From positions 30,938,001 to 31,002,000 of the forward strand of contig NC_043014.1 in the NCBI RefSeq assembly GCF_006345805.1: a DNA stretch of 64,000 nucleotides. The letters run 5' to 3'. Position 1 is the stretch's first letter. Every line of letters begins with the position of its first letter. Of the stretch, positions 14,293-56,864 are shown one piece after another. Source of the DNA: Octopus sinensis (Eukaryota). Under the pieces are notes generated by a model. It did no database searches and was not told where the DNA came from. It was given only the letters and a program-made list of their open reading frames with translations. The translations under genes were made by a program, and so were the position numbers.

Positions 14293-14667
14293 CTTCTGTC
14301 TACTAAATCCACTCAGAAGGCTTTTGTCAGTCCAAGGCTATAGCAGAAAACACTTTCCCAAGGTGCCATGCAGTGAGACTGAACCTGGAACCATATGGTT
14401 GGGAAACAAGCTTCTGACCACACAGCCATGCCTGCTAACTTTTTTTCTCTAATGTCTTTCCTTGTTTTGCTGCTGGTCTTGTGCCCTGTGCGAACAACAA
14501 TGTTTTCAGGAATTTTGCATTCTCCTTGAAATTCTTCATGCTGTTTACTGAAAAGGAATTGTCAGGAACATTCTTTATATGTATCATCATACTTCCTTTG
14601 GACCTGTGTGTGTCCATATTATATATACATAGATATATATGCATCCATATATATATACACACTTTTA

Positions 14668-14998
14668 TTCTTTTACTTGTTTCAGTCATTTGACTGCAGC
14701 CATGCATGCTGGAGCACTGCCTTTAGTTGAACAAATCGACTCCAGGACTTATTCTTTGTAAGCCTAGTACTTATTCTATCAGACTCTTTTGCCCAACTGC
14801 TAAGTTACAAGGACGTAAATACACCAGCATCAGTTGTCAAGCGATGGTGGGGGGACAGACACAAACGCACACGCACACACGACGGGCTTCTTTCAGTTTC
14901 CATCTACCAAATCCACTCACAAGGCTTTGGTTGGCCAGAGGCTATAGTAGAAGACACTTGCCCTAGGTGCCACACAGTGGAACTGAACCCGGAACCAT
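14668..14998 (-). mobile_element. SINE family A, near full length, low divergence
   Basis: Complete match to the family layout, including the internal CA tract and GAAGACACTTGCCC. Confidence 0.9.
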
Positions 14999-16152
14999 AA
15001 GAATTGGGAAGGGCATCAAGTTGTAGAAACCATGCCAAATCAGACTGGAAACTGTTGCTGCTCTCTGATTTACCAGTTCCAGTCAAATTGTCTAACCCAT
15101 GCCAGCATGGAAAGCAGACCCTATATGATGATGATGATAATATATACAAACATATATATGTATAAAATTCAGGTAATATGTCTGATAATATGAAACGTAT
15201 ATGATTAGCGCTCAGGTTGACCTGTTGCCTGGACTTACTATATAACTGTTCAAAGAGAATACCAGATATACCATTCAACATTCCCCAACTGATCTTTTAT
15301 CGACCTCTTGTGATCTAAACTCCTGTAACATTCAGTTCCACTCTCATGTTGTGTCAATGTTTAAATATATAAATGTCATAATCTAACCTGATACCAGTTT
15401 GCCTGTTTAGACTTTTATACTATTATATATATGTGTATATACACACACACACACTTATATATATACACAGACATAGATACAGATGCACACACAGACTCAC
15501 ATTTGTGTGTGTATATGCATGTATTTGTATATATATGTGCATTTGTGTCTGCTGCATCCTCGTGATTAATTTTCACTCTCTTTCTCTCTCTCTCTCTTTT
15601 ACTCACCTCTCTCCCTCTTTCTCTACCCACTCCTTTCTCACTACTACTGTATTCTTTTTGTTATAAAAGAGTCTGCCATATCTGATTTTTCATTATTTGC
15701 ATGTCTGTCTGCCTGCCCTCGTGATTTATTCCTTTTTCTCTCTCCTTCTTCGTTTCTGTTGCACACATACACACAATCTCACACATGCACACACACACAC
15801 ACACATACACACGCATGCACACACGTGTCTGTCTGTGCATGTGCTTAATTGCTTGTATGTTTCTTTTTAAAGCATGTGTGGTTGTGGGTGTGTTGTGTAG
15901 GTGTGACTGTCTGCACCCACCTGATTTTGTTTTTCTATGTGAAGAAGGTATCTTTGCTTTTACTTTGTTGTGTTACATGCGTGCAGTTGTATGTATGCTT
16001 ATGCAAGTGTACATGTCTGTGAGTTTCTATGTTGTGCTTGTGTTTTTGTTTCCCTGAAATTCTTGATATCTGTATGTGTGTGCATGAGTGCATCTACATT
16101 TCATCTCACTGTATGTGTATACATACATATATATTTTCTGTCTGTCTCTCTT

Positions 16153-17870: not shown

Positions 17871-18541
17871 CCCTTAACCCTATAGTATTCAGATTACTCT
17901 GTTAAATATAATATTTTTTTTACTCAAATTGTTTTGAATTAATCAAGCATTATCTTATAGCTTTGAGGTTTCAATGATGTGATTGTTTATTTTTAGAATG
18001 TTAATGTAGGTTAGGTGTGAGAGGCTAGATATTGCCAGTTTGAATAGAAAACATGTAGAATATCTGGGCCAGATATGGCCAGTTTAAACACTAAAGGGTT
18101 AAACAGTGGACATCATCAATTGATGTTTCAAAAGTTTTACATGGATACAGCCATCACTATTTGGTGCCTGAGTGTCTACTTCTACAAAATGCACATAGGT
18201 GTAAGTAGCCCTTATCATTGACAGAAATCAAGTTGCAAATGGAAGATTTATACAGTGATAAAGAAGTTTTTGCTAATTTTCCTTTATCATCAGATGATGA
18301 TGATAATGATGACATTCTAGATAACACGAAAGAAAATGATTCTTCAACTAACTCTGGATGGAAAATGTGCCACAATATTTCTCCATTTCTGCATTTCTTT
18401 GATAATAATGTGGGAATCTCAAATGAATCTATACTCACATCAGATGCAAAGGAAAGTGAATATTTTACAGCATTTTCAGACGAGATGATAAATTTTTGTT
18501 TTTGCATATTTAAAGTGAATATAAGTAAAAAAAAAAAATGA
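17871..18541 (+). mobile_element. piggyBac-like transposon left end and N-terminal transposase remnant, interrupted by a MITE
   Basis: ORF 18218-18541 has an acidic tract, then W..P.L.FF...GI...EYFTAFSDEMINF, resembling the piggyBac DDE_Tnp_1_7 N-terminal xYFxLFFTDExI motif. Removing the MITE restores TTAA|CCCTTAAACAGTGGAC. Confidence 0.6.
17878..18098. mobile_element. TTAA-flanked piggyBac-type MITE, family 1, complete
   Basis: TTAA(17874-17877)|CCCTATAGTATTCAG ... ACACTAAAGGG|TTAA(18099-18102). Confidence 0.9.
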
Positions 18542-34056: not shown

Positions 34057-36687
34057 TTCAAATAATGTCAGGATCAACTAAACAGATTCCCACAACAAAA
34101 GTGAAACTGGTGTAGTATACATGCACAAATTTACAGTCTTAACAGACTATATTGTATACATTTCAAGAATATAGAGGTGCATTTAGTGATATAGAAGAAG
34201 CACATATAAAGTTGTTGAAACAGGATGATGATGATGATTGTTTAAGTAAGTGCTGGTATGGCTGTGTGGTTAAGAAGTTTGCTTCCCACTTACATGGTTT
34301 CAGGTTCAGTCCCAATGTTTGACACCTTGGGCAAATGTCTTCTACCATAGCCCCAGGTTGACCAAAGCCTTGTGTATGTATGTGTGTGTGTGTCCTTGAC
34401 ATTGCATGATAATTGTAAATAAGTGTCACTGTCATTTTAGCAGTGTCTTTTGTTTCCAGTCTTCCATAAAAACAGGTCTGGCTATGGGGAAATGTTACCT
34501 TGCTTGTAAGTAAGTGAGGATTGGTGACAGGAAGGGCATCCTGTTGTAGAAAATCTGCCACAACAAATTCTGGTTGATCCATGCAAGCATGGAAAAGTGG
34601 ACTTTAAGATGATGATGAGGATGTTTCTAGCATAGGCACAGGGCCTGAAATTTAGGGGAAAGAGAATAGTCATTTCTAAAATTCCCATTTACTTGACTTT
34701 ATTTTATTGACTCCAAAAGGAGGAAAAACAAAGTTGATTAATGTGAGATTTGAACTCAGAATGTGAAGAGCTAGAGCAAGTACTGCAAAGTTTTTTTACT
34801 CTTCTGATGCTCTAACAATTCTGCCAATCTGCTCTAAATAATAATTGTATAAAGCTTGGTTTTATGTTCAAACTGTCAAGATCTGCTCTCTTACACCTAC
34901 TCTACAATGTCATTCTAAAAATATGCAATCACATCATCAGAATCTCAAAGCTTTGAGAATATGCATGATTAATTCAAAATAATGTGAATGTATTTGTTGC
35001 CCACTTCTGCTTGACAACCAGTGTTGGTCTGTTTATGTCCCGTAATGTAAACAGTTTGGCAAAAGATACTGATAGAATAAACACTAGGCTTAACAAAATA
35101 TGAGTACTGGGGTCAATTCATCTGACTAAAAAATTCTTCTATGTGGTGCCCCAGCATGGCCACAGTCTAATGACTGAAAAAAGTAAGAGATTAAAGATAT
35201 AAGCACTATATTTGATGGAATAACCTGAATGCTAAAGGGCTAATCAAATTGTCCATAGTACTTGAGTGGTAGTTTATTATATCAGCTCTGAAAAGATGAA
35301 AGCCAAAATCAACCTTGGTGGGATTCAAACTCCTAAATACCACTTGACAGTTTGTCCGCTGCTCTAACAGTTCTGCCAAATTGCTCCTCAAGTATTTCTA
35401 ACATAGGCACAAGACCACACATAATGGTGGTTGGGAAGGAGAAATGGAATCAATTGGACCACTCCTAGTAATTGACTGATTCTTATTTGATCACCACTAA
35501 TCAGTCTATAGTGGCAGTGGTCACAGACTAATGTGGAAAACGGCAAAGAGCAAAACAGATGATGCAACACCGTCCCTACCATTTATCATCAAAGTTGTTT
35601 TCCCCTTCATCATCATCATCATTTACATGAGTGCTAAAAACTCTTTGTCACATCAGTATGAAATCTAGTCAATAACGGAATAATTAGAAATTAGATTTGT
35701 CGTAAATTTTTATTCTTTCTTTTTCTTGTTAATGTTAATTTTATTTTTAGTCTGTTGGATTAAATATTGTATTTAAAAAAAAAAATTTTTTTTCTTATTT
35801 GTTTCTAACTTTTATAAATGTCAACATTTTCTTTTTCTCTATTGATTTATTCTTTCTTTCTTCAATTATGTTCTATTTAAGTGTGATAATTTGTATTGCA
35901 ACCTATTCTCCACCCCACCTCTCTTTACTCCTTGATACTGTGTCCAGTAATTGTCTTCGGGTCTTAATTCTGCTTTCTGTTCTTTTTCTGTTTCTGCTTT
36001 TTTTTTTCCTGTCTGTTTGGTTATTTTTTAAAAATATTTGTTTAAATAATGCTGCAGTTGTTTGTTTTATAAATTTTAAATCTGTCTTGGTATTTTTACT
36101 GTTATTATTATTTTTATTTCACAGTTGTAAGAATACTTGATTATAATAATGATAATAATAATAGTAATAATTATAACAGTGATGATAATGGTCTGTGAGT
36201 GACGCGCAAGAAGCAATCTTTGTAGAAGTGGTTATTAGGTGGGGGAAAACAATTTGATAATATTCACTGGTATATATTTTAGTCACATCCAAAGAAATGG
36301 AAGAGAAATTCTACCCTGGGTGAGATTTTGAACTTGGAACATTGATGTAAAAAATTAAGTATTTATTATAAGTCTGATACCGTAGCATTTTGGTCATTTT
36401 TCTACCTGGTGAAGCATTTTTGGTCAGCAACACTGGTATTCACCTTTCTGTTACCATATTTCTTTTGAAATATACAACTTTTGTTTCAGTTAATTTTATA
36501 AATTTTGAAAAGTTTATTGATAACTTTGTCATTATGAAGCTAGTTTTTTGAACAATTTAGCATGAAATTTTGATGGAAGATTTTAATACAGGTAATTTCA
36601 AAACAGGAAGTTTTGAACTAGAAGGCAGTTTCTGGCAGGTTGGTTTCAAGAGAGTTTGTCTGCTAGGCTTAGCCGGCACCTTCAGTT

Positions 36688-37514: not shown

Positions 37515-37848
37515 TTTTACTTGTTCCAGTCATTTGACTGAACCAATTGAGCCCAGGTCTTAATTTTTGTAATCCTAGTACTTATTCTATCAGTCTCTTA
37601 GGCTGAACCGCTAGGTTATGGGGACATAAATTCACCAACATCGGTTGTCAAGTCATGGTGAGGGAGGGCAAACACCCCCCCACACACATACGATGGACTT
37701 CTTTCAGTTTCCATCTACCAAATCCTCTCACAGGGCTTTGGTTGGCCCAAGGCCGTAGTAGAAGACACTTGCCCAAGGTGCCATTCAGTGGAACTGAACC
37801 CAGAACTATGTGGTTGGGAAGCAAGCTTCTTACCATACAGCCACGTGT
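37515..37848 (-). mobile_element. SINE family A
   Basis: Collinear with 14668-14998. Confidence 0.85.
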
Positions 37849-38697
37849 GCATTTATATTTTACATATTATTTGTTAGTTGTTTGATTCTTAATCCTGTGC
37901 CCATATATCTACTGGGCTTGTCAGCTGGTAATATAGTTCTTATAGATGATGGAGGGGGTTCAGCTCTGCAGTGTGGGTTGACAATTACATAATTACAGCT
38001 AATTATGAATTGTTTCTATTGGTTTGAATTTATAAACCAACCAGAGAAGGAGGGAGGTAGTACCCATGCTACAGGCCTCACTCCCATCCTTCTGGGATTG
38101 TTGTAAGACATTGCCTAGCTAGAACATCTGCTGTAAGAAATGGATATCTATAATTGAATGCCTGCAACAAATGTTTTGGCTAAATGCACCCAAGGACCAG
38201 GGTGTGGCTTGTTCAGCAACACAAGAATGCTTTTTCAATTAGGTAGTACTCTGATAACACGAACTTTATACATTTTATACAGCATGTTTACACACTCACC
38301 TCTTTGCTCCTCCTCATTCTCTCTTCTCACACACACACACACACGGACTTTCAAATATTCATACTCAATCTGAAATACACATATACTATCTCTCTTTCTT
38401 TCTCTCTCACTCTCTCTCTCTCTCTGACATTTACACACACACACACATACAGACATTCTCTCATATTCTCTCTCATACATATGCACACACTAAGGCACAC
38501 ATTAGCATATGCATCTTGCATAGAAGAAGGTGTTTATTCCTTTTGGATTGCAAAACAGCTAGAAAATATAGATATGGTATAGTGGTGATGACGAGGATGC
38601 TGATAATAATGACATTGGCTGTTGTTATTGTTCTTCTTGTCTTTAATGCCTTCATGGTTGTTGTCTTTCAATGTCATCATCGTCGTCATTATCACAG

Positions 38698-40244: not shown

Positions 40245-40812
40245 TCAAGTTTATTGACCATAAAATTGATGCCACTGATTTCTATTGACTGCAATTTTCT
40301 TTGCATCTAGCTAAGTGATATTGGCCTCTCTCACATCAGCTATGAATGCTCTGCACCATGGAACTCTGGTCTTGTTGTCTTTTTCTCTTTGGTGGTGTCC
40401 GTTTGAAAGCTGCTTTAGAATGTTCTAGCATCCAAAGCTTGTAATCTGTTGGTTTTATTCTTCAGTCTGTGATGGTTTAGCTAAGTGATCCTGTGTTGCC
40501 TTTCTTTAGAATATCTTCATTTGTTATGTGGTCTTTCCTGTACATTCTCAAAAGCCTTCACAAGCATCCTTCACAGATTGCATCTAGCTTTGTGTTGACT
40601 TTCATGCTGTTCTTCCATGTCTCACTAGCATAAAGAACTATTGGTAGAACTACGCAGTTATGCAGCTGGATCTTTGTGTGTAGGGTGGGATGGTGTTGGA
40701 AGATCAGGTTCTCTGGAAGATGGCTGCAGTTTTGTCAGTTCCATCATTGCTGTGTATTTCGATATCACCTTTGTTAGTGATGATGCTCCCTAGATAGATG
40801 AATCTGGCTACT
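40245..40812 (-). mobile_element. Decayed RTE LINE 3' fragment, type lacking the Cys-rich insert in the visible part
   Basis: Minus translation FIYLGSIITNKGD..VVLPIVLYASETWK..RKDHITNEDIL shows RTE hallmarks, with stops. Confidence 0.85.
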
Positions 40813-41137
40813 GTCACGCACACACACACGTGTATATATTTGTGTCTTTGTGTCGTCTGAGTTTGCCCTGCCCCCATAACTTAGCAGTTTGGTGAAAGAA
40901 TTGGGCTTCAGAAATAAGTGCCATAATTAAATGGTATGTATATAGGTCTTTTACTTTAAATGAGGAATATGCACTAGTTGGAAGTTGTGGAGGTTCATAT
41001 TTGCAGAGTAAGTATATATTAAAACCAAAAAATAGAAATTTTGGTATATTTTTAATTCTATGTTACATGCGTTTCATTACAGTATAGGAAATCCATTATG
41101 TCTATAACTAATAATAATGATAATAATAATAAAAAGG

Positions 41138-41345
41138 CAAGCTGGCAGAATTGTTAGCACCCCAGGCAAGATGCTTAGTGGTGTTTTGCTTGTCTTTATG
41201 TTCTGAGTTCAAATTTCACCAAGGTTGACTTTGCCTTTATTCCTTTTGGGGTTGATAAAACAAGTATGAGTTGAATGTTAAAGGTCTGTGTTATCAACTT
41301 CCCCCTAAATTGCTGGCCTTGTGCTAAAATTTCAAACCAGAATTA
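41138..41345 (+). mobile_element. SINE family B
   Basis: GGCAAGCTGGCAGAATTGTTAGCAC..GAGTTCAAATT..GACTTTGCCTTT. Confidence 0.85.
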
Positions 41346-42195
41346 ATAATAATAATATTATGAATATAATAAATTCATAATAGGTAATATACATATAGAA
41401 AGTGCATATAAGATCTATTTGTAATTCCTTGGATAAAGAATAAAAAAAATAATATTGGGTTGACTAAAAAAGTTTGTTTTTTCCTTTGCGCATGCATACT
41501 CATCAGATTCCTCTCCTCCAGACCCACATACTCCCACTCACATTCTCTCACACTCACTGTTGGAGCTGATTGTTACTTCTGTTATTTGAGTTTTTCACTT
41601 ATATGCATTCATTCACGAGGCATATACCTACAAACAAGAAACTTGGAGTGGTAGCAAAGTATATCAACAACTACAAAAGAATAGATAATAATTATCTACA
41701 ATAGAATTTGTGTGTGTGTGTGTGTGTGTGTGTATACACACACAAACATATTTTTTTTTTAAATAGAAGAAATTCAAAAAGCAGAAACAAAGTCTAGAAT
41801 CAAGTGAGTAAAGGTAACAAAGACTAAAGTTTATTGTTTGCAGGAAAGAAAAGGAGACTGCTATGTTTGCTATGCAAAAATAGGAATAACAAGGAATTCC
41901 ATGCAATGCACCCAGTGTAAACTATGTGTGCTAAAGGGATGCAGTGATAACTGGGGCAAGGTGATAGAAAAGGACTTCATATGTATCAGATGCACAGGAG
42001 TAGTTAGCAGTATGGGCACCCATGGAATAAATTCTTTCAAATATTTGAAGTACTCCCAAGAAGTAATTGATAGCTTTCATTACTTAAGTAACTTATTTAG
42101 CAGTAGAGGTGAATGTTCTGAAAGTATAGCCAGAGTAAGAACAGGGTTGAAAAAGTTTGGGGAACTATTACTTCTGTTAAGTGACAAAGAGATTA

Positions 42196-42620
42196 CACTG
42201 TGTAATATGACTTTTGTCCTTGGATAGCAACTGTTATTTTCTGTTTGCTTAGTCTTAGAAAGTGTGGAAAATGGCTAATATTTCTTTCAAATTTTGCTTT
42301 TCTCAAACTTGTCTCTGCTTGGACAGCTAGAAGTAAACTGAACTGTTGAGCTTATCATCCCTGTATTTATGTTGCCAGAACATTCTAGAAATTCTGAAAC
42401 TTTTAGAAACTTCTTGAAAGTTCTAGAAAATTGCACTTCAGCAACTCAGCACTGAATCTATCTGAAATGTAATGGAAAATAGGTCAGTTTCAAAACATTG
42501 ATGTCCAGGTCACAAAAGCAAAGTTTGAAGGGAATAGTAGTCATTTCCTTTGATTTCTAGATAGAACCATATAGGAAATAACACTGACTGACTAAAGACA
42601 AAAAAAAAAGGTATACAGTG
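42196..42620. mobile_element. 425-bp non-autonomous TIR element with CACTG ends and 3-bp TSD (CACTA/EnSpm-like)
   Basis: TTA|CACTGTGTA ... TATACAGTG|TTA, plus an inner 31-bp inverted block matching 23/31. Removing it restores the LINE reading VTKRLYL-RVK versus TKGLSLRV in the 13.6-kb copy. Confidence 0.75.
42377..42429. promoter_or_regulatory. Heat-shock element (nGAAn inverted-repeat) array
   Basis: aGAAc aTTCt aGAAa (42377-42391), then tGAAa cTTTt aGAAa cTTCt tGAAa gTTCt aGAAa (42395-42429): five consecutive perfect pentamers, or seven with one mismatch. Function is untested. Confidence 0.7.
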
Positions 42621-44017
42621 TTATATCTGAGTGAAACACAACCAGGTAACATATGATGCAATGTTACCTGGTTGCCATACACGGCCTTTGAATATGGATG
42701 ACAGACAAAGGGGTAGGGGTGGGGGGAATGAAACGAACATGTTCAGCTGGATATATGAATGAACAACGTAGCATAAATGAGCTGATAGAAAAACTGAGTA
42801 TAAGATGTCCTGAGCAAAAGAAAATACTGTGGTAGGGGTGTGTAATGTGTTGGGAGGATAACAGTGCCTGATTGTGAAGAGGTGTTGAATGGGAATATGT
42901 AGTGAAGACTGATCTCAAGAGGCTGGACTTCCATGAAGTTAAAAAAGGACCGCCAGAAGTGGTGATGCTTTGTGCCAGGGTAAAGACCTTTCCAATTTAA
43001 AACAAGCATGGAAAAATGGACATAAAATATTGTTGATAATGATGATCACACAAATATTTGGTTTGAAGTATTAATTGGATGTCTAACTTAGCAAAAGTAT
43101 CCAAATTGCATTGTTATTAGACAAAAATGTCATGAGGATTATTCTATCTATTGCTTTAGTTTTTCTTCTTTTTCAAATTCTTGTTAATTGGTTACAAACT
43201 ACTGTCATGTAGATGGTTTCATAACTTGTGCATGTAATGTCACAATTTATGTACATGCATTTGCACTCTCTCTCTCTCTCTCTCCTTTCTTTCCCTCATA
43301 CACACAAGGGTCATTAAGTAAAACCTACTTCTGCTACTGAACAATATCATGGTATAAATCACAGCAATAAAATGCTAAAGGTTGAAATGTGAAGGCAATT
43401 ACAGAATGAAGAATGAATAAAAAACATAGGATATTAAGAAGTAATAGAATCACAAAAATAACAATCCTGAAAGTAGTGCAGTAGTTGGGTAAAGGTTTCT
43501 GGTGGAGTCTGTCCTACCTGAGTAAAATTTAATGCATAAAGTTATTGTTACCTGTAGGGTAAAGTTCTGGATTTATGGTAGAGGAAGAATTCTGAGGCTC
43601 TCTTTGTACAAAGAAATCCTTTGTTATGTTTATTTAGTAGGTTTATGTTTAGTAAATAAAACCGTAAAGCTTTCCCTTGAACATAAATTACAAGATTTCA
43701 CATTTCCACTACAGGACTTGGTCATAGAATACTGAGCAAAACATATGGCCTTTTGTCAAGGATCATTTTAATTTAATGCAGTAAATAATATAGTTCTAGT
43801 GCCATCTCAATTTCTTTTTATTTGAAAGTGGCTTTTAGTACATGGCTACTCTTTCATTAACATACTCACTCATACTTCCACATGCAAATATGTACGTGTG
43901 TTTGTATATATTAGTAGGGAACTAGGTGATAATCAATAGACAGAACTATTTAGTAGATTCATAGACAGAAATTATTGGTGAAGAAAGCAGTCTTTAAGTG
44001 AAGTTAGTGTCAAGTTT

Positions 44018-44986: not shown

Positions 44987-45817
44987 ATTGAAGTATATTA
45001 TAACCATGAGAGAGACTGTGTGTATATGTGTGTGCAGTCAAAATGGGTAATGAATGATTAATTTTAATGTACAGATGTGAAAATCAGAGATAAAATATTC
45101 TGACCTTGAATAAAATTGCAACACAGATTATGCAACAGTTGCATTAGACAGACATGCGGGCCTGATTTCATGCTGTAAAATGTTGCTACAGTTTGGCCAT
45201 GGATGCAAGGTATAGCTATGTGGTTAAGAAATTTGCTTTATAACCATATGGTTTGGGGTTCAATCCCACTGTGAAGCTCCTTGGGTAAATGGTTTTTTAC
45301 TATAGCCTTTGGTTGGCCAATACCTTGTGAGTGCAATTTCATATGGTAAATTTAGAGAAATATGCTGAATGTGTGTGTGTGTATGTGTATATTTACTCAT
45401 GTAAAATTGTAAGTTAATGATTTGATAAATATTGATAAAATAAATCCTAGTGTTGGTATGATTGACTATAAACTGTTAAGTCTTGTGGTTGAATCCAGTT
45501 AATAACATATCAGAGAATGCTGTTGGGATGAGTGCTGACTCACCTTTATATAATCTATTATCATTATTATTATTAACATGAAAGTGGCAAGTTGACATAG
45601 AGTAACTAAGACTAAATTAGTCAATGTGTTGAGTTTTAAAAGATGGTTGAGCGTAATTTGTGGGACATTCAACTGCTAATTTTAAGTGTGTCTGGCTATA
45701 TAGAAGCAATAAGAGTAGTTATGTAAGATTTTGGTAGCAGTGGTGGTCATGGTGGTAGTGGCAGCAGTAGTATTGGTAGGTGTAATAAGTATTCAGAAGT
45801 TAAAATTTTTATTATTT

Positions 45818-46187
45818 TTTTTTACTTGTTTCAGTCATTATACTGTGGCCATACTGGGGCACTGTCTTGAAGAATTTTAGTCAAATGAATTGACCTCAGT
45901 ACTTACTTTTTAAAGATTAGTACTTATTCTGTCAATTCCACTAAGTTACAGGGATGTAAACACACCAATACCAGTTGCCAAGTGATGGTGGTGGGGGAAA
46001 CAGACATAAAGACACATACACATACACAATGGGGTTATATCAGTTTCCATCTACCAAATCTACTTACAAGGCTTTGGTTGGCCTGAGGCTATAGTAGAAA
46101 ACACTTGGCCAAGGTGTCATGCAAGGGAACTGAACCCAGAATCATGTGATTGGGAAGCAAACTTCTTACCACACAGCCATATCTGCA
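45818..46187 (-). mobile_element. SINE family A, near full length
   Basis: Collinear with 14668-14998. Confidence 0.85.
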
Positions 46188-46644
46188 CTTTATGTGTATG
46201 TTTGAGATATGTATACTTGTGAGTGGAGCATAGCTTGTTTGGTTAAGAAGTTTACTTAGCAACCCTATGATTTTGGTTCACTCCCTCTGTGCATTTGGTT
46301 ACCACATGTATTCTATAATAGTCTTGGATCATGAAAAGTTTTGTTGGAGATGGAAACTATGTAGAAGCCTGTTATAATAATCACTCTTGGTTTTGGAGAT
46401 GATAGTCTTAATCCATCACTCAATTTAACACCACCAACTTTTCCCCTTGATGCTTTATTATTAATTTAATAGTTGTCCAAACTTCAAGTTGTTGTTTTGA
46501 CCCAGGTCAAGACTAATAAAGTCCATTTATGAGCAGAGCATTTCTTCCATGATCATCTTACTGTATTTTCTGATAGTATGTTCTGGACTAAATTATTCAA
46601 CTGAAATTGTAGTCATGGCCAGTGCCAGTAACATATGAAAGGAA

Positions 46645-47580: not shown

Positions 47581-48628
47581 ACTTTTCACACGTGCATGCA
47601 CACAAACATTTATATATTGAGTATATGTATGCATGTCTGCGGGTGAGTGTATACATATATGCTGTTGTGTGTGCATATATACATATCATCAGTTAATGTC
47701 TGTTTTCCATGCTGGCACAGGTTGAACAGTTTGACAGGGGCTGTCTAAGTAGAAGACCACACCAGGCTTCACTGTCTGTTTTGGCAGGGGTTTTATGGCT
47801 GGATGCCCTTCCTAACACCAACTACCTTACAGACTGGACATATATGTATATATTTGCATGCCTGTGTGCATGTTTGTGTGTCTGTGTAAATACATGTATG
47901 GTACATGCTTTTTCTTCTGAGTGAGGGTACATGAATGAGTGTATGTTTGTAAGTACCTCTGAATATACATGCTATTGCTGTATAGCCCTAGGCTAACTCT
48001 GGTCAAGCAGACTTATAAGGCATTCCAGCTACAATAATCTTTTTTGTACACATTTTAAAAGTGTATTATCAAATAAAATCCCTACCATTCTTTTAAAATA
48101 GTAAGATGTGATATAAGAGATTTGGCTGCTATTTCTGGCAGATGGAGGGACCATGTTGAAACTCCTCATCGGTTTGTAGAAGCATGCATTTCTGTGTGTG
48201 CATGTATATGTATAGACATATGTGACTGACTAAATATATGACTAAATGCGTATGTTTGTAAATGATCTCTATATATGCCTGCATATCTCTCGGTATTTGT
48301 GCATATGTGTGTAGATATTTTTTTAAAAAAAAGGCTGAAATAAAACTAACTGTAGTAAAAGGAAAGATGGATGCAGGTAAATTGATGAAGTGGAAGGAAA
48401 GAAGAGTGTGAAAGTAGCCCTGGCCGTGTGTGCACGTGAAAGAGAGAGTGTGTGTATAAATCAATTGATGTTTGGCTCAACTCCAGACGGAAGGTGCATA
48501 AGTATCCACTGCACCATTACTTCATAGCATCATCGCAGTAAACTACTGTGCAATCTGATGTTTTAGCAGGGAGGTGGGGGTAGAATAGAAAAAGAGTGGG
48601 GGACGATGTGTGCATATATATATATATA

Positions 48629-48683
<55 letters not shown>

Positions 48684-49231
48684 TATATATACATACATAC
48701 ATACACGCACACATACATGTGTGTGTGATTTCAGAGGGAGAGATTTGTGCAGCAGAAGAAGGAGTCTTAGACAAGAGTGGGGAGGGGGATGTTTGGAAGA
48801 AGAGAAAACAAAAGTGAAGGGGAGGGTCACATGGTCACATGTTGAGTTGAGGAGAGAGGGAGTGAGAGAGAGAAAGAGAGATTGAAGCAGTTGGGGAGAG
48901 ATGAAAAAGAGAGAGACAGATTTACGCAGAGGATAACACAGATGGACATATGCAGAGTGAGATATATATATATATGTATATACACACACAGGTAAAAAAG
49001 TGACTTGATTCATATAGAGTGCAAGACATGCATGCAGAGAGAGAGAGAGATGGATGGGTTGGAGCATAGATAAACAGAAGGATTCAAAGAAAAAGGAAGG
49101 GGAAATTGGTGAAAGAAAGAAAGCAGACAGGAAGAGTGAGGGAATTTTTTAAATAATGTCTTAGAGAAGGAAGACCGATGTCCATGTGTCCTTTCACGGT
49201 TTCTGCAACTGGGTTGGAGGTAGAAGCTAAC

Positions 49232-49341
49232 CTCAGATGAGACATCTGGCCCAAATGTTTGCAGCAGGGCAGACTCTGTTAAAGTCAGCCGAGGCCTGTT
49301 GGTGGTGTTCATTTGGATGACATGCTTAGAGAGAGAGATGT
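49232..49341 (-). CDS. Candidate coding exon (xISLSKHVIQMNTTNRPRLTLTESALLQTFGPDVSSE)
   Basis: Strong acceptor CACTTTCTTATCTTCTCTGCAG, donor GAG|GTTAGC, only one of three frames open, locally GC-richer. No homologue recognised. Confidence 0.45.
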
Positions 49342-49367
49342 CTGCAGAGAAGATAAGAAAGTGCAAG

Positions 49368-49412
<45 letters not shown>

Positions 49413-49599
49413 CACGTATACAGAAAGAGACATTGAGAAACTTGCATATAGGAGAAGGTTAAAGAGAGAGTACAAGAGTTGCATACAGAGATGCATGGAA
49501 AGAGAGAAGGACGGACATACAGATAGAGTTAGATATATAGGTATATTTACTGATATATATGGTGAGAGGAAGGGAAAGATATGTACATGTGTGTGTGAG

Positions 49600-49641
<42 letters not shown>

Positions 49642-49924
49642 GTCTGCAGAGATGTATGGAGACAAACAGGCAGATGAAATATTGCTTGTAGTTACTGTCT
49701 TAGTAATGAGTTAGCACTAGTGTAAATACAATAAACTGGCATTTTGTGTCTAGTGTAGTGCTGGTTGTGGAGTGTAGTGACATTGGTGTGGTAGTGGTGG
49801 TCGTGGTGAGAGCTGCAACACATTTCAGAAGTAAAAGGAAGAAGAGGAGCAAGCTAAAGAATTCGGTGTAAAAACAGCAAAATGAAACTGAAGTGCCATC
49901 TTTTTTTATTTCATTCTGCTTGAA

Positions 49925-49973
<49 letters not shown>

Positions 49974-50965
49974 GTGTGTGTGTGTGTCTAAGCAGGTATG
50001 TTTGTGTTTATGGGGGTGGGTGGTTTACATGTGTCTGTCTAAGCATAATTTTGTGTTTGTGTATCTGCTCTAGGCATGTGTGAGTGTGTGTAAAAACATG
50101 TGTGTGCATGTATAGGAATCTATGTTCTTGTGGGCAGGTGTGTGCGTGTGCAGGAATGTATGCTCATGTGTGCAGGTGTGTGTGTGTGTGTGCAGGTATC
50201 TATGCAGTCCCATGATAGCTTCTTGTAATAGTCCATCTTCCCAGCTTGCAACCACCTGTAGAGAGATGCAGGCTGGTACAGTGTGGCTGCCCACAATCAG
50301 TCTATGGTCTGTGGTCCTCAGGCATGGAGTTGTTTTGCTTATATCTCTTTTTATTAATTGCTTGGTGGCATAGTAGTTGAGTAGTGTTGAGGGTTGGTAG
50401 AATGACAATATGCAGTCACAGCACTTGCAGGTAGCTCAAATAATATCTTTTTTTTATGAATTGTCAAAGATGTTTCTCAATGCTTATATGAGAAAATTTT
50501 AATATCCGTCATCTCACACACCTGCCTTGTGTTATCGTACCTAAGTAGAAACCTTTTCCCCACCTTGACCCAACCACTGGCAGCTTATTTCCTCATTTAT
50601 TCTCCCAGTCCCTCACCTATTTAACCAGCTTGCTAAGTTTGGTGCAACACATTGCGATCTATCTATTTATCTGTCTGCCTGTCTAACTATGTCTATATTT
50701 AGAAATATATAGACATATGTGTCTATCTATATCTAACCTGTCTGTCTATGTCTATTGATCTGTCTGTCTGTCTCTCTATACATCTATCTGCTTATCTGTC
50801 TGTCTTTCTGTCTATCTGCTTATCTGTCTGTCTTTCTGTCTATCTGTTTTTCTGCCTGTCTATTTGCTTGTCCGTCTGTCTATTTATCTATCTGTCTATC
50901 TACACACACACCAGTCAAACTCTCTATATATTCATCTATATTTCTATGTATTCATATGTCTATCC

Positions 50966-50999
<34 letters not shown>

Positions 51000-51059
51000 T
51001 ATATATATATATTTATATTATATATAATATATATTTATATTATATATATTATATATATT

Positions 51060-51098
<39 letters not shown>

Positions 51099-51241
51099 AT
51101 ATATATTTATATATATATTTATAATATATATATTTATATATATATAATATATTATATATTATATATATAATATATATATATATTTATAATATATATAATA
51201 TATATTTATATATATAATATATATATATATATATATTTATA

Positions 51242-51340
<99 letters not shown>

Positions 51341-51484
51341 ATATATATATAATTTATATATATATATATATTTATATAATATATATATTATATTTATATA
51401 TATATATATATATTTATATATATTATATATATATATATTTTATATATATATATATATATTTTATATATATATTATATATATATT

Positions 51485-51517
<33 letters not shown>

Positions 51518-51704
51518 ATTTTTATATATATATATATATTTTATATATAATATATATATATATATTATATATATAATATATATTTTATATATATATATAT
51601 TTTATATATATATATATTTATATATTTATATATTATTATATATTATATATATATATTTATATATATATATTTATATATATATATATATTATTATATATAT
51701 TTAT

Positions 51705-51739
<35 letters not shown>

Positions 51740-51917
51740 ATATTATTATATATATTATATATATATATTTATATTATATATATATTTAATATATATATTA
51801 TATTTATATATATTTTATATATATATATTTATATATATATTTATATTTATATATTTATATATATATTTATATTTATATATTTATATATATATTTATATTT
51901 ATATATTTATATATATT

Positions 51918-51949
<32 letters not shown>

Positions 51950-52018
51950 ATATATTTATATAATATTATATATATATTTAATATATATATATAATTATAT
52001 ATATATATTATATATAAT

Positions 52019-55994: not shown

Positions 55995-56392
55995 GGTATG
56001 GCTGTGTAATAAGAAGTTTGCTTCCTAACCACATGGTTCCAAGTTCAGTCCCACTGCATGGCACCTATGGCAAGTGTCTTTTGCTATAACCCCAGGTTGA
56101 CCAAAACCTTGTGAATGGATTTGGTAGATAGAAATTGAAAGAAACCAGTTGCTTATATCTGTGTATGTATGTATGTGTGTGTGTCTTTGTGTCTGTGTTT
56201 GACCACCACCACTTGACAACCAGTGTTGGTGTGTTTATGTCCCAGTAACTTAGTGGTCCAGCAAAAGGTATTGATAGAAAAGTACCAGGCTTTAACAATA
56301 AAATAAAAACTGCAATTAATTTCATTCGACTAAAATTCCTCAAGGTGGTGCTCCAGCATGACCATAGTCGAATGACTGAAAGAAGTTAAAGA
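55995..56392 (+). mobile_element. SINE family A, full length
   Basis: Head GGCTGTGTAATAAGAAGTTTGC..GTTCAGTCCCACTGC through tail GCTCCAGCATGACCATAGTCGAATGACTGAAA. Confidence 0.9.
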
Positions 56393-56864
56393 TATTACAT
56401 ACCAGGATGAGAGGATAAGAACGGAAAGAGCAGAATATTAGAAGAAAACCAATTTTGATTTTTATAGAAAGATTTAAGCTCTTGATTTCTAGTTCAAGGG
56501 CAGTAACTTTCTTTGTGGTATTTGTTTTTTTTTTCACAGCATCTTCCATTCTTGCCCCACATGTAGGCAGATAGAGATGTGTGTTCACATATGCATCTAT
56601 TCATTCTCCAGCATGACATACAAATATATTACACATTTTATGTTCATAAGTGTACAGAAATTGAACATGCATGCATTTGCATACTTATCTAGATACACAC
56701 GTGGCCTTTCATAAAAAAAAACAAAAAGCAAAAATGCCACAAGTAAAGTTATCCCCTTTGACCAATAATTGAGAACTAAAATCCTTTGTCAAAAATCAAA
56801 AGTTTTTCTCAGAATACTTTGTTGTTATATGATTAATGAATTAATATAATATCTTTAAGTTTTT

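What the first reader, a model, noticed from the sequence alone, without database searches (positions are those of the whole stretch)
42196..42620. CACTG-ended MITE carrying a central high-affinity-type heat-shock element array
Seen: a 425-bp insert with CACTG/CAGTG ends, a TTA duplication and imperfect ~47-bp TIRs splits an RTE LINE exactly. Near its centre lie a 3-unit HSE and a 7-unit HSE with five consecutive perfect nGAAn pentamers. Known: HSF1 trimers bind such arrays cooperatively; CACTA/CACTG ends with 2-3 bp TSDs define the CMC/EnSpm superfamily; HSE-bearing transposons (C. elegans Helitrons, Arabidopsis ONSEN) confer heat inducibility on neighbouring DNA. Inference: this may be a cephalopod MITE family that distributes heat-shock enhancers. 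I know of no description of one but cannot search.
Basis: partly seen in the sequence, partly recalled or inferred. Interest (0 to 1): 0.8.

Follow-up and report, generated by a model that had tools for sequence, protein, structure and literature searches.

The report
Old octopus MITE, HSE-like central repeat
A 425-bp dead DNA transposon in an octopus genome carries at its exact centre a 10-bp tandem repeat that spells a long heat-shock-factor binding array, but the one related copy found with that centre has only a minimal site, so it looks like local repeat expansion in an ordinary transposon, not a family that spreads heat-shock enhancers.

Summary
Window 42196-42620 is a 425-bp element with CACTG/CAGTG ends and TTA on both sides. 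Its inverted arms are longer than reported (about 106 bp, 70% complementary). It interrupts a degenerate LINE whose protein homology resumes across the join. The HSE units are real: 3 perfect units, then 8 units of which 6 are perfect and 5 consecutive.

It belongs to a real family. Related fragments occur in Octopus vulgaris (two) and O. bimaculoides (one). A Logan contig carries the same LINE/MITE junction at about 80% identity, so the insertion is old.

Ends and TSD fit Chapaev3-type CMC transposons (CAC... termini, TWA duplication).

The array is a 10-bp minisatellite (TTCTAGAAAC x4.9) lying on the element's dyad axis. The only other copy with this central segment has just GTTCTAGAAAATTCT. 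It differs from the window by exactly the repeat units. Three other fragments lack the segment, and the Logan contig has it deleted.

Best reading: a neutral, decayed foldback-like MITE in which slippage of a palindromic seed produced an HSE-like array. HSF binding is plausible from sequence but untested. Family-wide HSE dispersal is unsupported, though the sample is only about 265 kb of octopus DNA.

The parts
42193..42195 (.). left copy of the TTA target-site duplication
   Evidence: same junction GAGATTA|CA(A/C)TGTGTAAT in L002
42196..42620 (+). 425-bp non-autonomous TIR element (MITE, foldback-like, Chapaev3/CMC-like ends); longest ORF 52 aa
   Evidence: related copies in L001 and L005
42196..42301 (+). 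5' inverted arm (starts CACTGTGTAATATG)
   Evidence: I1, I3; homologous to L001 88077-88189 and L002 1349-1399
42514..42620 (+). 3' inverted arm (ends GGTATACAGTG)
   Evidence: homologous to L001 88587-88782, L001 95864-96050 and L005 10937-11093
42377..42391 (.). three perfect HSE pentamers AGAAC ATTCT AGAAA
42395..42434 (.). eight-unit HSE-like run, six perfect, five consecutive perfect at 42405-42429
42383..42429 (.). 10-bp minisatellite, consensus TTCTAGAAAC, 4.9 copies; its midpoint lies within 2 bp of the dyad axis (42407.5)
42621..42623 (.). right copy of the TTA target-site duplication
41838..42195 (+). degenerate LINE fragment upstream of the insertion (PHD-finger region and post-RT region, ...LLLLLSDKEI)
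42624..42990 (+). continuation of the same LINE downstream, with frameshifts and stops; the 3' limit is approximate

Best explanation
This is an old, immobile copy of a non-autonomous cut-and-paste DNA transposon: a MITE with about 106-bp imperfect inverted arms, Chapaev3/CMC-like CACTG ends and a TTA duplication. It inserted into a LINE in an octopod ancestor.

The element is nearly a full palindrome. At its dyad axis this subfamily carried a short palindromic seed, roughly AGAAC-nTTCT-AGAAA-ATTCT. In this copy the seed expanded by replication slippage in 10-bp steps into a small minisatellite.

An HSE is itself a 10-bp-periodic palindrome (GAAnnTTCnn). Any such expansion therefore produces a correctly phased multi-unit HSE array.

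The array is most likely a neutral by-product. By sequence it should bind HSF trimers cooperatively if the chromatin is open, but nothing indicates that this was selected or that the family spreads such arrays.

Shown here: anatomy, family membership, age, tandem-repeat nature, axis position, and the unit-number difference between copies. Inferred: the slippage mechanism, neutrality, and HSF binding potential.
For: Anatomy.

Family copies:
- Two in O. vulgaris (L001).
- One in O. bimaculoides (L005).
- Pairwise identity is 72-86%.
- Other MITEs are nested inside two of them.

Age: L002 shares the same LINE/MITE junction at about 80% identity.

Repeat nature and position:
- TRF finds a 10-bp repeat, 4.9 copies, 79% matches.
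- The dyad axis is at 42407.5 and the array midpoint at 42405.5.

Unit-number difference between copies:
- L001-B1 reads ...GTCAAAAC GTTCT AGAAA ATTCT GCTTCAG.
- The window reads ...CCAGAAC ATTCT AGAAA [39 nt = four 9-10-nt units] ATTGC ACTTCAG.
- This is a VNTR-type difference.

No excess conservation:
- 9 of 11 cores are intact, against about 7-9 expected under 7-14% neutral decay (P 0.17-0.63).
- Two 1-nt deletions break the phase.

Other points:
- The array is deleted in L002.
- No convincing coding ORF of 70 aa or more in the 64-kb window; short exons and a target gene not excluded.
- Termini and TSD match the published Chapaev3 signature.
- CMC elements are reported across molluscs.
Against: - Only two copies carry the central segment, so expansion in the window cannot be told from contraction in L001-B1. 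There is no outgroup.
- Both of those copies keep at least 3 perfect units. Their two-copy consensus is a 4-unit perfect HSE, which is unlikely by chance and could be a real family feature.
- Within the array, changes fall more on spacer than on core positions (2 against 6, P about 0.05). This count is fragile, because position 10 of the unit has no clear consensus.
- A five-unit perfect run is rare: none elsewhere in 265 kb.
- No functional data of any kind.
Confidence: 0.6

Rival explanations
1. The MITE family or subfamily carries an HSE module as a family trait and has dispersed heat-responsive enhancers across octopod genomes, as Helitrons did in Caenorhabditis.
For: - Both copies with the central segment hold at least 3 perfect HSE units at the homologous position.
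- The inferred two-copy ancestor is a 4-unit HSE.
- The family is fairly abundant: 4 insertions in about 265 kb.
- Helitron-borne HSEs are likewise tandem and repetitive (PMC6927752).
Against: - The long array is private to one of two informative copies, and the difference equals whole repeat units.
- Three of five fragments belong to variants without the segment.
- The array is deleted in L002.
- The palindromic seed sits on the dyad axis of a foldback element, where a palindrome is expected anyway.
- There is a large look-elsewhere effect: one motif noticed after the fact in a repeat-rich window.
Confidence: 0.12
2. Only this copy matters. The expanded array is bound by HSF1 and acts as a local, possibly lineage-specific, heat-responsive enhancer or HSF sink, whatever the rest of the family does.
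For: - There are 3 + 8 phased units with extended-consensus features such as AGAAnnTTCT.
- Arrays of this length are very rare in the sampled octopus DNA.
- Established knowledge: HSF trimers bind three or more inverted nGAAn units, and bind cooperatively on longer arrays.
- HSF1 also binds non-genic tandem repeats such as human satellite III (PMC9032817, abstract listed).
Against: - No convincing coding ORF of 70 aa or more anywhere in the 64-kb window; short exons not excluded.
- The array shows decay: two mutated cores and two phase-breaking deletions.
- The region is dispensable in the L002 lineage.
- No accessibility, binding or expression data.
Confidence: 0.2
3. The long hairpin is the functional feature. 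The element is transcribed as part of a host transcript and gives rise to hairpin-derived small RNAs, and the central repeat is merely the loop.
For: The element folds into an extended hairpin better than all 100 shuffles.
Against: - The arms are only 70% complementary.
- No Rfam family reaches threshold.
- There is no evidence of transcription at this locus.
- Any inverted-repeat transposon folds like this.
Confidence: 0.04
4. It is not a transposon insertion at all, only a chance inverted repeat inside the LINE.
For: No empty allele was available. About 10 nt of LINE may be unaccounted for near the join, depending on the alignment.
Against: - Homologous arms occur at unrelated loci in two species.
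- Terminal match, TTA duplication and LINE continuity all fit an insertion.
Confidence: 0.02

Closest known systems
Chapaev3 elements of the CMC (CACTA-Mirage-Chapaev) superfamily, e.g. Chapaev3-1N2_AC of Anolis (PMC3014272)
   Same: 3-bp TWA target duplication (TTA here). TIR begins CAC: ours is CACTGTGTAAT, against the published CACTATGTAACAAAATTT and CACTGRWAAACA. Non-autonomous, old and decayed.
   Different: No autonomous partner or transposase was seen. The arms here are much longer (about 106 bp against 11-19 bp) and the element is almost fully palindromic. The resemblance rests on about 10 terminal bases and one clean TSD.
HSE-carrying Helitrons of Caenorhabditis (Garrigues et al. 2019, PMC6927752)
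   Same: A DNA transposon with tandem, overlapping HSEs.
   Different: In Caenorhabditis the HSE clusters are a family-wide feature, bound by HSF-1 and linked to heat-inducible genes. Here one copy has an array, one has a minimal site, and nothing is known about binding.
ONSEN/ATCOPIA78 LTR retrotransposon of Arabidopsis
   Same: A transposon bearing HSEs.
   Different: ONSEN's HSEs drive its own heat-activated transcription and copying. A MITE needs no promoter of its own. This comparison is from my own knowledge and was not tested here.
HSF1-bound tandem repeats such as human satellite III (review PMC9032817)
   Same: Simple tandem repetition of a GAA-containing unit creates multi-unit HSF sites outside genes.
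   Different: Satellite III spans megabases and its HSF1 binding is demonstrated. This array is 58 bp and untested.
Foldback-like / long-TIR MITEs with variable centres
   Same: Nearly full-length dyad symmetry, a heterogeneous internal region between copies, and a central repeat.
   Different: This is a descriptive class rather than a transposase family.

Membership tests
MITE (non-autonomous TIR DNA transposon) | terminal inverted repeats | tested here: met
   The terminal 9 nt match 8/9, and 90-nt arms are 70% complementary.
MITE (non-autonomous TIR DNA transposon) | target-site duplication flanking the element | tested here: met
   TTA on both sides in the window. The 5' flank of L001 copy A is also TTA. 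The 3' ends of the other copies are too decayed to read.
MITE (non-autonomous TIR DNA transposon) | small size and no coding capacity | tested here: met
   425 bp; the longest stop-to-stop ORF is 52 aa.
MITE (non-autonomous TIR DNA transposon) | multiple dispersed copies | tested here: met
   Four independent insertions in about 265 kb from two Octopus species. The genome-wide count could not be obtained.
MITE (non-autonomous TIR DNA transposon) | host sequence continuous across the empty site | tested here: inconclusive
   LINE protein homology stops at 42200 and resumes at 42637 with a frameshift. No empty allele was found, since L002 carries the insertion.
CMC superfamily, Chapaev3 group | TIR starting CAC... 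(CACTA/CACTG) | tested here: met
   CACTG/CAGTG in the window. L001 copy A has TACTA, and other 3' ends read CAGGTG and AAGTG.
CMC superfamily, Chapaev3 group | 3-bp TSD of consensus TWA | tested here: met
   TTA/TTA here. The definition is taken from PMC3014272. Only one complete TSD was seen.
CMC superfamily, Chapaev3 group | shares termini with an autonomous element encoding a CMC DDE transposase | not testable with these tools
   No bulk cephalopod DNA was accessible, and no transposase was found in the loci fetched.
PIF/Harbinger (Tourist-like MITE) | TWA TSD and Harbinger-type TIRs or transposase | tested here: inconclusive
   The TTA TSD fits, but the CAC termini fit Chapaev3 better. 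No transposase was available.
Heat-shock element (HSF binding site) | three or more contiguous inverted nGAAn units in 5-bp phase | tested here: met
   Three perfect units, then an 8-unit run with 6 perfect and 5 consecutive.
Heat-shock element (HSF binding site) | bound by HSF and confers heat inducibility | not testable with these tools
   Needs EMSA, CUT&Tag or a reporter assay.
HSE-dispersing transposon family (Helitron/ONSEN-like) | HSE array present in the family consensus or in most copies | tested here: inconclusive
   Two of two copies with the central segment have at least 3 units, but only one has an array. Three of five fragments lack the segment. n is too small.
HSE-dispersing transposon family (Helitron/ONSEN-like) | copies associated with heat-induced genes or HSF occupancy | not testable with these tools
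   No expression or binding data.
LINE, RTE clade (host of the insertion) | non-LTR RT with the characteristic post-RT region | tested here: met
   83 homologues at E <= 1e-3. Full-length ones carry RVT_1 plus a PHD finger.
LINE, RTE clade (host of the insertion) | phylogenetic placement within RTE | not tested
   Plausible, since RTE-BovB is expanded in cephalopods (PMC10294476), but no tree was made.

The most novel reading that the evidence does not exclude
An octopod Chapaev3-like foldback MITE subfamily has an HSE palindrome as its dyad centre. Because the HSE period equals the slippage unit, copies repeatedly grow and shrink their HSE arrays. This would create a genome-wide, copy-number-variable set of HSF-binding sites, some of which act as tunable heat-responsive enhancers in a marine ectotherm.
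Probability: 0.1. Interest if true: 0.65.

Novelty: new member of a known kind. Interest (0 to 1): 0.25.

Why it matters
If the family really seeded phased HSE arrays, it would be the first case in a mollusc of transposon-borne heat-shock enhancers. It would also be a neat mechanism, with minisatellite slippage tuning HSF affinity, relevant to thermal adaptation in cephalopods. As the evidence stands, it is an ordinary decayed MITE. Its value is as a documented example of how a palindromic transposon centre plus 10-bp slippage can mimic a high-affinity HSE, and as a caution against reading function into such arrays.

Tried and rejected
**Searching for more copies**
1. A second copy inside the window: none found by blastn, nhmmer or profile nhmmer.
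2. Copies through called ORFs: a concatenated six-segment translation of the MITE against 5.8 billion proteins gave one hit, P0001. That hit led to L001.
3. The LINE flank as a protein query gave only P0002, hence L002.
4. To pull in more octopus DNA I queried translated pieces of the abundant SINE.
   - Thirteen O. bimaculoides proteins came back, but only three had contigs on record (L003-L005).
   - P0006 was not on record.
   - All cluster look-ups returned singletons, short contigs or metagenome contigs.
   - L006 is a 1.3-kb metagenome contig. L007 is a metagenome contig, apparently eukaryotic, with no octopus SINE.
5. Exact-pattern scans of JGI metagenomes, GTDB genomes and IMG/VR with a 35-base degenerate 3'-arm pattern found 0 matches.

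**Ideas dropped**
6. I first thought about 50 bp (17 codons) of LINE were missing at the join, reading LYLSETQ as MLYGSETW. tblastn against homologues places the continuation at 42637 (...VTYDAMLPGCHTR), so the idea was dropped.
7. An alternative boundary with a 7-bp AGTGAMA duplication eight bases outside the ends was considered. It was rejected because KEI (AAA GAG ATT) is LINE sequence (P0038 has KKEIAL) and because other copies share nothing beyond the CACTG/CAGTG ends.

**Other checks**
8. Rfam: nothing near threshold.
9. Literature: no paper combines heat shock element, transposable element and octopus. SRR11869390 is not mentioned in any paper searched, so the species of L002 is unknown.

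Full report
**1. What is at the coordinates**

The window is AT-rich, repeat-laden DNA of about 35% GC. At 42196-42620 lies a 425-bp segment that begins CACTGTGTAATATG and ends GGTATACAGTG. TTA sits immediately outside both ends, at 42193-95 and 42621-23.

- The repeat finder pairs 42212-42301 with 42514-42603, 90 nt at 70%.
- blastn finds the same pairing (E 1e-5 against the whole window).
- nhmmer aligns almost the entire element (positions 17-410) to its own reverse complement (E 4e-16).
- As single-stranded DNA it folds into one long hairpin (-50.7 kcal/mol, z -2.7, none of 100 shuffles as stable).

No reading frame inside it exceeds 52 codons.

**2. The host sequence**

Upstream, frame +3 reads ...CYVCYAKIGITRNSMQCTQCKLCVLKGC...VIDSFHYLSNLFSSRGECSESIARVRTGLKKFGELLLLLSDKEI.
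- An exhaustive HMMER search found 83 relatives.
- The full-length relatives carry RVT_1 followed by a PHD finger. The flank is therefore the post-RT part of a non-LTR retrotransposon.
- tblastn of these relatives ends at 42200 and picks up again at 42637 (...VTYDAMLPGCHTRPLNMDD against YDACVRTAMLHGCETWAVTADD).

The LINE thus continues across the join, with a frameshift and at most about 10 nt unaccounted for. That is ordinary for a copy full of stops. My first impression that 17 codons were missing was wrong.

RTE-clade membership was not tested, although RTE-BovB is reported as expanded in cephalopods (PMC10294476).

**3. The HSE units**

Read in 5-bp phase, the centre is:
- AGAAC ATTCT AGAAA (42377-42391), three perfect units.
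- A 1-nt slip.
- TGAAA CTTTT AGAAA CTTCT TGAAA GTTCT AGAAA ATTGC (42395-42434), six of eight perfect and five in a row.

Dinucleotide shuffles of the window expect 0.5, 0.02 and 0 runs of >=3, >=4 and >=5 units. In all about 265 kb of octopus DNA I could assemble, no other run of >=4 exists. So the array is not a composition artefact.

It is, however, a tandem repeat. TRF reports 42383-42429 as 4.9 copies of TTCTAGAAAC at 79% match. An HSE is by definition a palindrome with a 10-bp period. Iterating one TTCnnGAAnn unit therefore yields a correctly phased array with no selection needed.

The inverted arms place the element's dyad axis at 42407.5, and the array midpoint is 42405.5. The array is the apex of the palindrome.

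**4. It is a family, and an old one**

The tools hold almost no eukaryotic DNA, so I searched for copies through proteins.
- Translated MITE segments hit the C-terminus of an annotated O. vulgaris protein (P0001, 92% over 27 aa). Its 106-kb locus, L001, holds two related elements.
- Translated pieces of the window's abundant SINE retrieved three O. bimaculoides loci. One of them, L005, holds a 3' arm.
- Copies are 72-86% identical to the window element.
- piggyBac-type MITEs (TTAA/CCCTTT ends) are nested in the L001 copies.
- The internal regions differ. Copy A has the 5' arm, a nested MITE, an unrelated 'X' segment and the 3' arm. L005 has X in the other orientation. Only L001 95381-95602 ('B1') shares the window's central segment.

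A Logan contig, L002 from run SRR11869390, is colinear with window 40902-42246 at about 80% identity. It contains the identical LINE/MITE junction (GAGATTA|CAATGTGTAATAC) and the first 51 bp of the element. It then jumps to window 42782. The insertion therefore predates that divergence, whether L002 is an orthologue or an old duplicate. In that lineage the rest of the element, array included, was deleted.

Four insertions in about 265 kb suggests on the order of 10^4 fragments per genome. This is a rough inference, biased by how the loci were found.

**5. Is the array a family trait?**

The only informative comparison is window against B1:
- Window: CCCTGTATTTATGTTGCCAGAAC ATTCT AGAAA [TTCTGAAAC TTTTAGAAAC TTCTTGAAAG TTCTAGAAA] ATTGC ACTTCAG.
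- B1: CCCTGTATTT--GTCAAAAC GTTCT AGAAA ATTCT GCTTCAG.

They differ by exactly the repeat units (39 nt), a VNTR-type difference.

Both keep three perfect units. Their consensus is a 4-unit palindrome, AGAAC nTTCT AGAAA ATTCT. A minimal HSE-like seed may therefore be ancestral to this subfamily, but the long array is private to one of the two copies. With no outgroup I cannot tell expansion here from contraction in B1.

Within the array, 9 of 11 cores are intact. Under 7-14% neutral decay, 7-9 are expected (P 0.17-0.63). Changes fall 2 on core and 6 on spacer positions (P about 0.05). That count is fragile, because unit position 10 has no clear consensus and the seed's spacers already differed. 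Two single-base deletions break the phase. I see no convincing sign of selection.

**6. Which transposon superfamily**

The TTA made me consider PIF/Harbinger. [quoted passage not shown] The first ten bases here, CACTGTGTAA, match the former at 9 of 10.

CMC elements are reported in all molluscs surveyed (PMC10294476). No transposase-bearing partner could be sought, so this remains a resemblance in defining end features, not demonstrated membership.

**7. Function**

No convincing coding ORF of 70 aa or more lies in the 64-kb window; short exons were not excluded, and Rfam finds nothing near threshold. By established knowledge of HSF, three or more inverted nGAAn units are needed and longer arrays bind cooperatively. 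The 58-bp array should therefore bind HSF in vitro.

Precedents for transposon- or repeat-borne HSF sites:
- Caenorhabditis Helitrons, whose HSEs are also tandem and overlapping (PMC6927752).
- Human satellite III (PMC9032817).
- ONSEN in Arabidopsis (from my own knowledge).

Whether this array is bound in vivo is unknown.

I rate the readings as follows:
- About 0.6: a neutral, decayed Chapaev3-like foldback MITE whose palindromic centre expanded by slippage.
- About 0.2: this copy alone is an HSF target.
- About 0.1: the family-wide enhancer idea.

**8. Verdict**

- Right: it is a MITE, it belongs to a family, and the CMC assignment fits.
- Not supported: a family that distributes high-affinity HSE arrays.

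The element is a new member of a known kind. Interest is low to moderate. It would rise sharply only if a genome-wide census, which I could not run, showed arrays in many copies.

Noticed in passing
window 14658-15141, 55995-56394, 45813-46192, 34859-35201, 37545-37857 (and many more): A very abundant SINE-like repeat of about 350 bp with an internal CA/TA microsatellite. There are 19 copies of at least 60% length in window + L001. Translated pieces of its consensus match the ends of 13 annotated O. bimaculoides proteins at 68-97% identity, which suggests frequent exonisation or annotation read-through.
   Followed up: partly
L001 88205-88425 and 95634-95853; also an element end at L001 ~95375-95384: piggyBac-type MITEs (CCCTTT...AAAGGG ends, TTAA flanks) are nested inside both O. 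vulgaris copies of the family. One of them truncates copy B1 at its 5' side.
   Followed up: no
L001 ~95890-95986 (O. vulgaris OX597841.1): The last 32 residues of the annotated CHTOP-like protein CAI9743197 (P0001), NLSEMLWKIGQFQNIDVQVTKAKFERNFSHFL, are a translation of the MITE 3' arm. This is either exonisation of the MITE or a gene-model artefact; the gene model spans 86 kb.
   Followed up: partly
L002 1349-1430 vs window 42196-42782: A Logan contig from run SRR11869390 keeps the same LINE/MITE junction and 51 bp of the MITE. It replaces the next ~535 bp (the rest of the MITE plus 160 bp of LINE) with 27 unrelated bases. The species is unknown and the run is not cited in any searchable paper.
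   Followed up: partly
window 42640-42673: A perfect 13-bp inverted repeat, AACCAGGTAACAT / ATGTTACCTGGTT, with an 8-nt loop lies inside the LINE 20 bp downstream of the MITE. It gives only a sub-threshold Rfam miRNA-like hit (27.6 bits against a 70-bit cut-off).
   Followed up: no
window 40615-40686 (minus strand): A second fragment of the same kind of LINE (TLHTKIQLHNCVVLPIVLYASETW) in the opposite orientation, 1.5 kb upstream.
   Followed up: no
L001 88430-88585 and L005 10590-10745: A ~150-bp segment ('X') accompanies the MITE 3' arm in two species but in opposite orientations. Its end resembles the MITE's internal ATATTTCTGCTTCAGTAGCTCAG motif. It may be the inner part of a longer ancestral foldback element.
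   Followed up: no
window 48001-52000: A strong composition swing: GC skew +0.45 at 48-50 kb, then GC 19% at 50-52 kb. The ORF translations there look like low-complexity, microsatellite-type blocks.
   Followed up: no
window 18209-18538 (+): An acidic 110-codon open frame (…SSDDDDNDDILDNTKENDSSTNSGWKM…FFDNNVGIS…YFTAFSDEMINF) that from memory resembles the N-terminal region of piggyBac-type transposases. It has no Pfam hit at E <= 0.01.
   Followed up: partly
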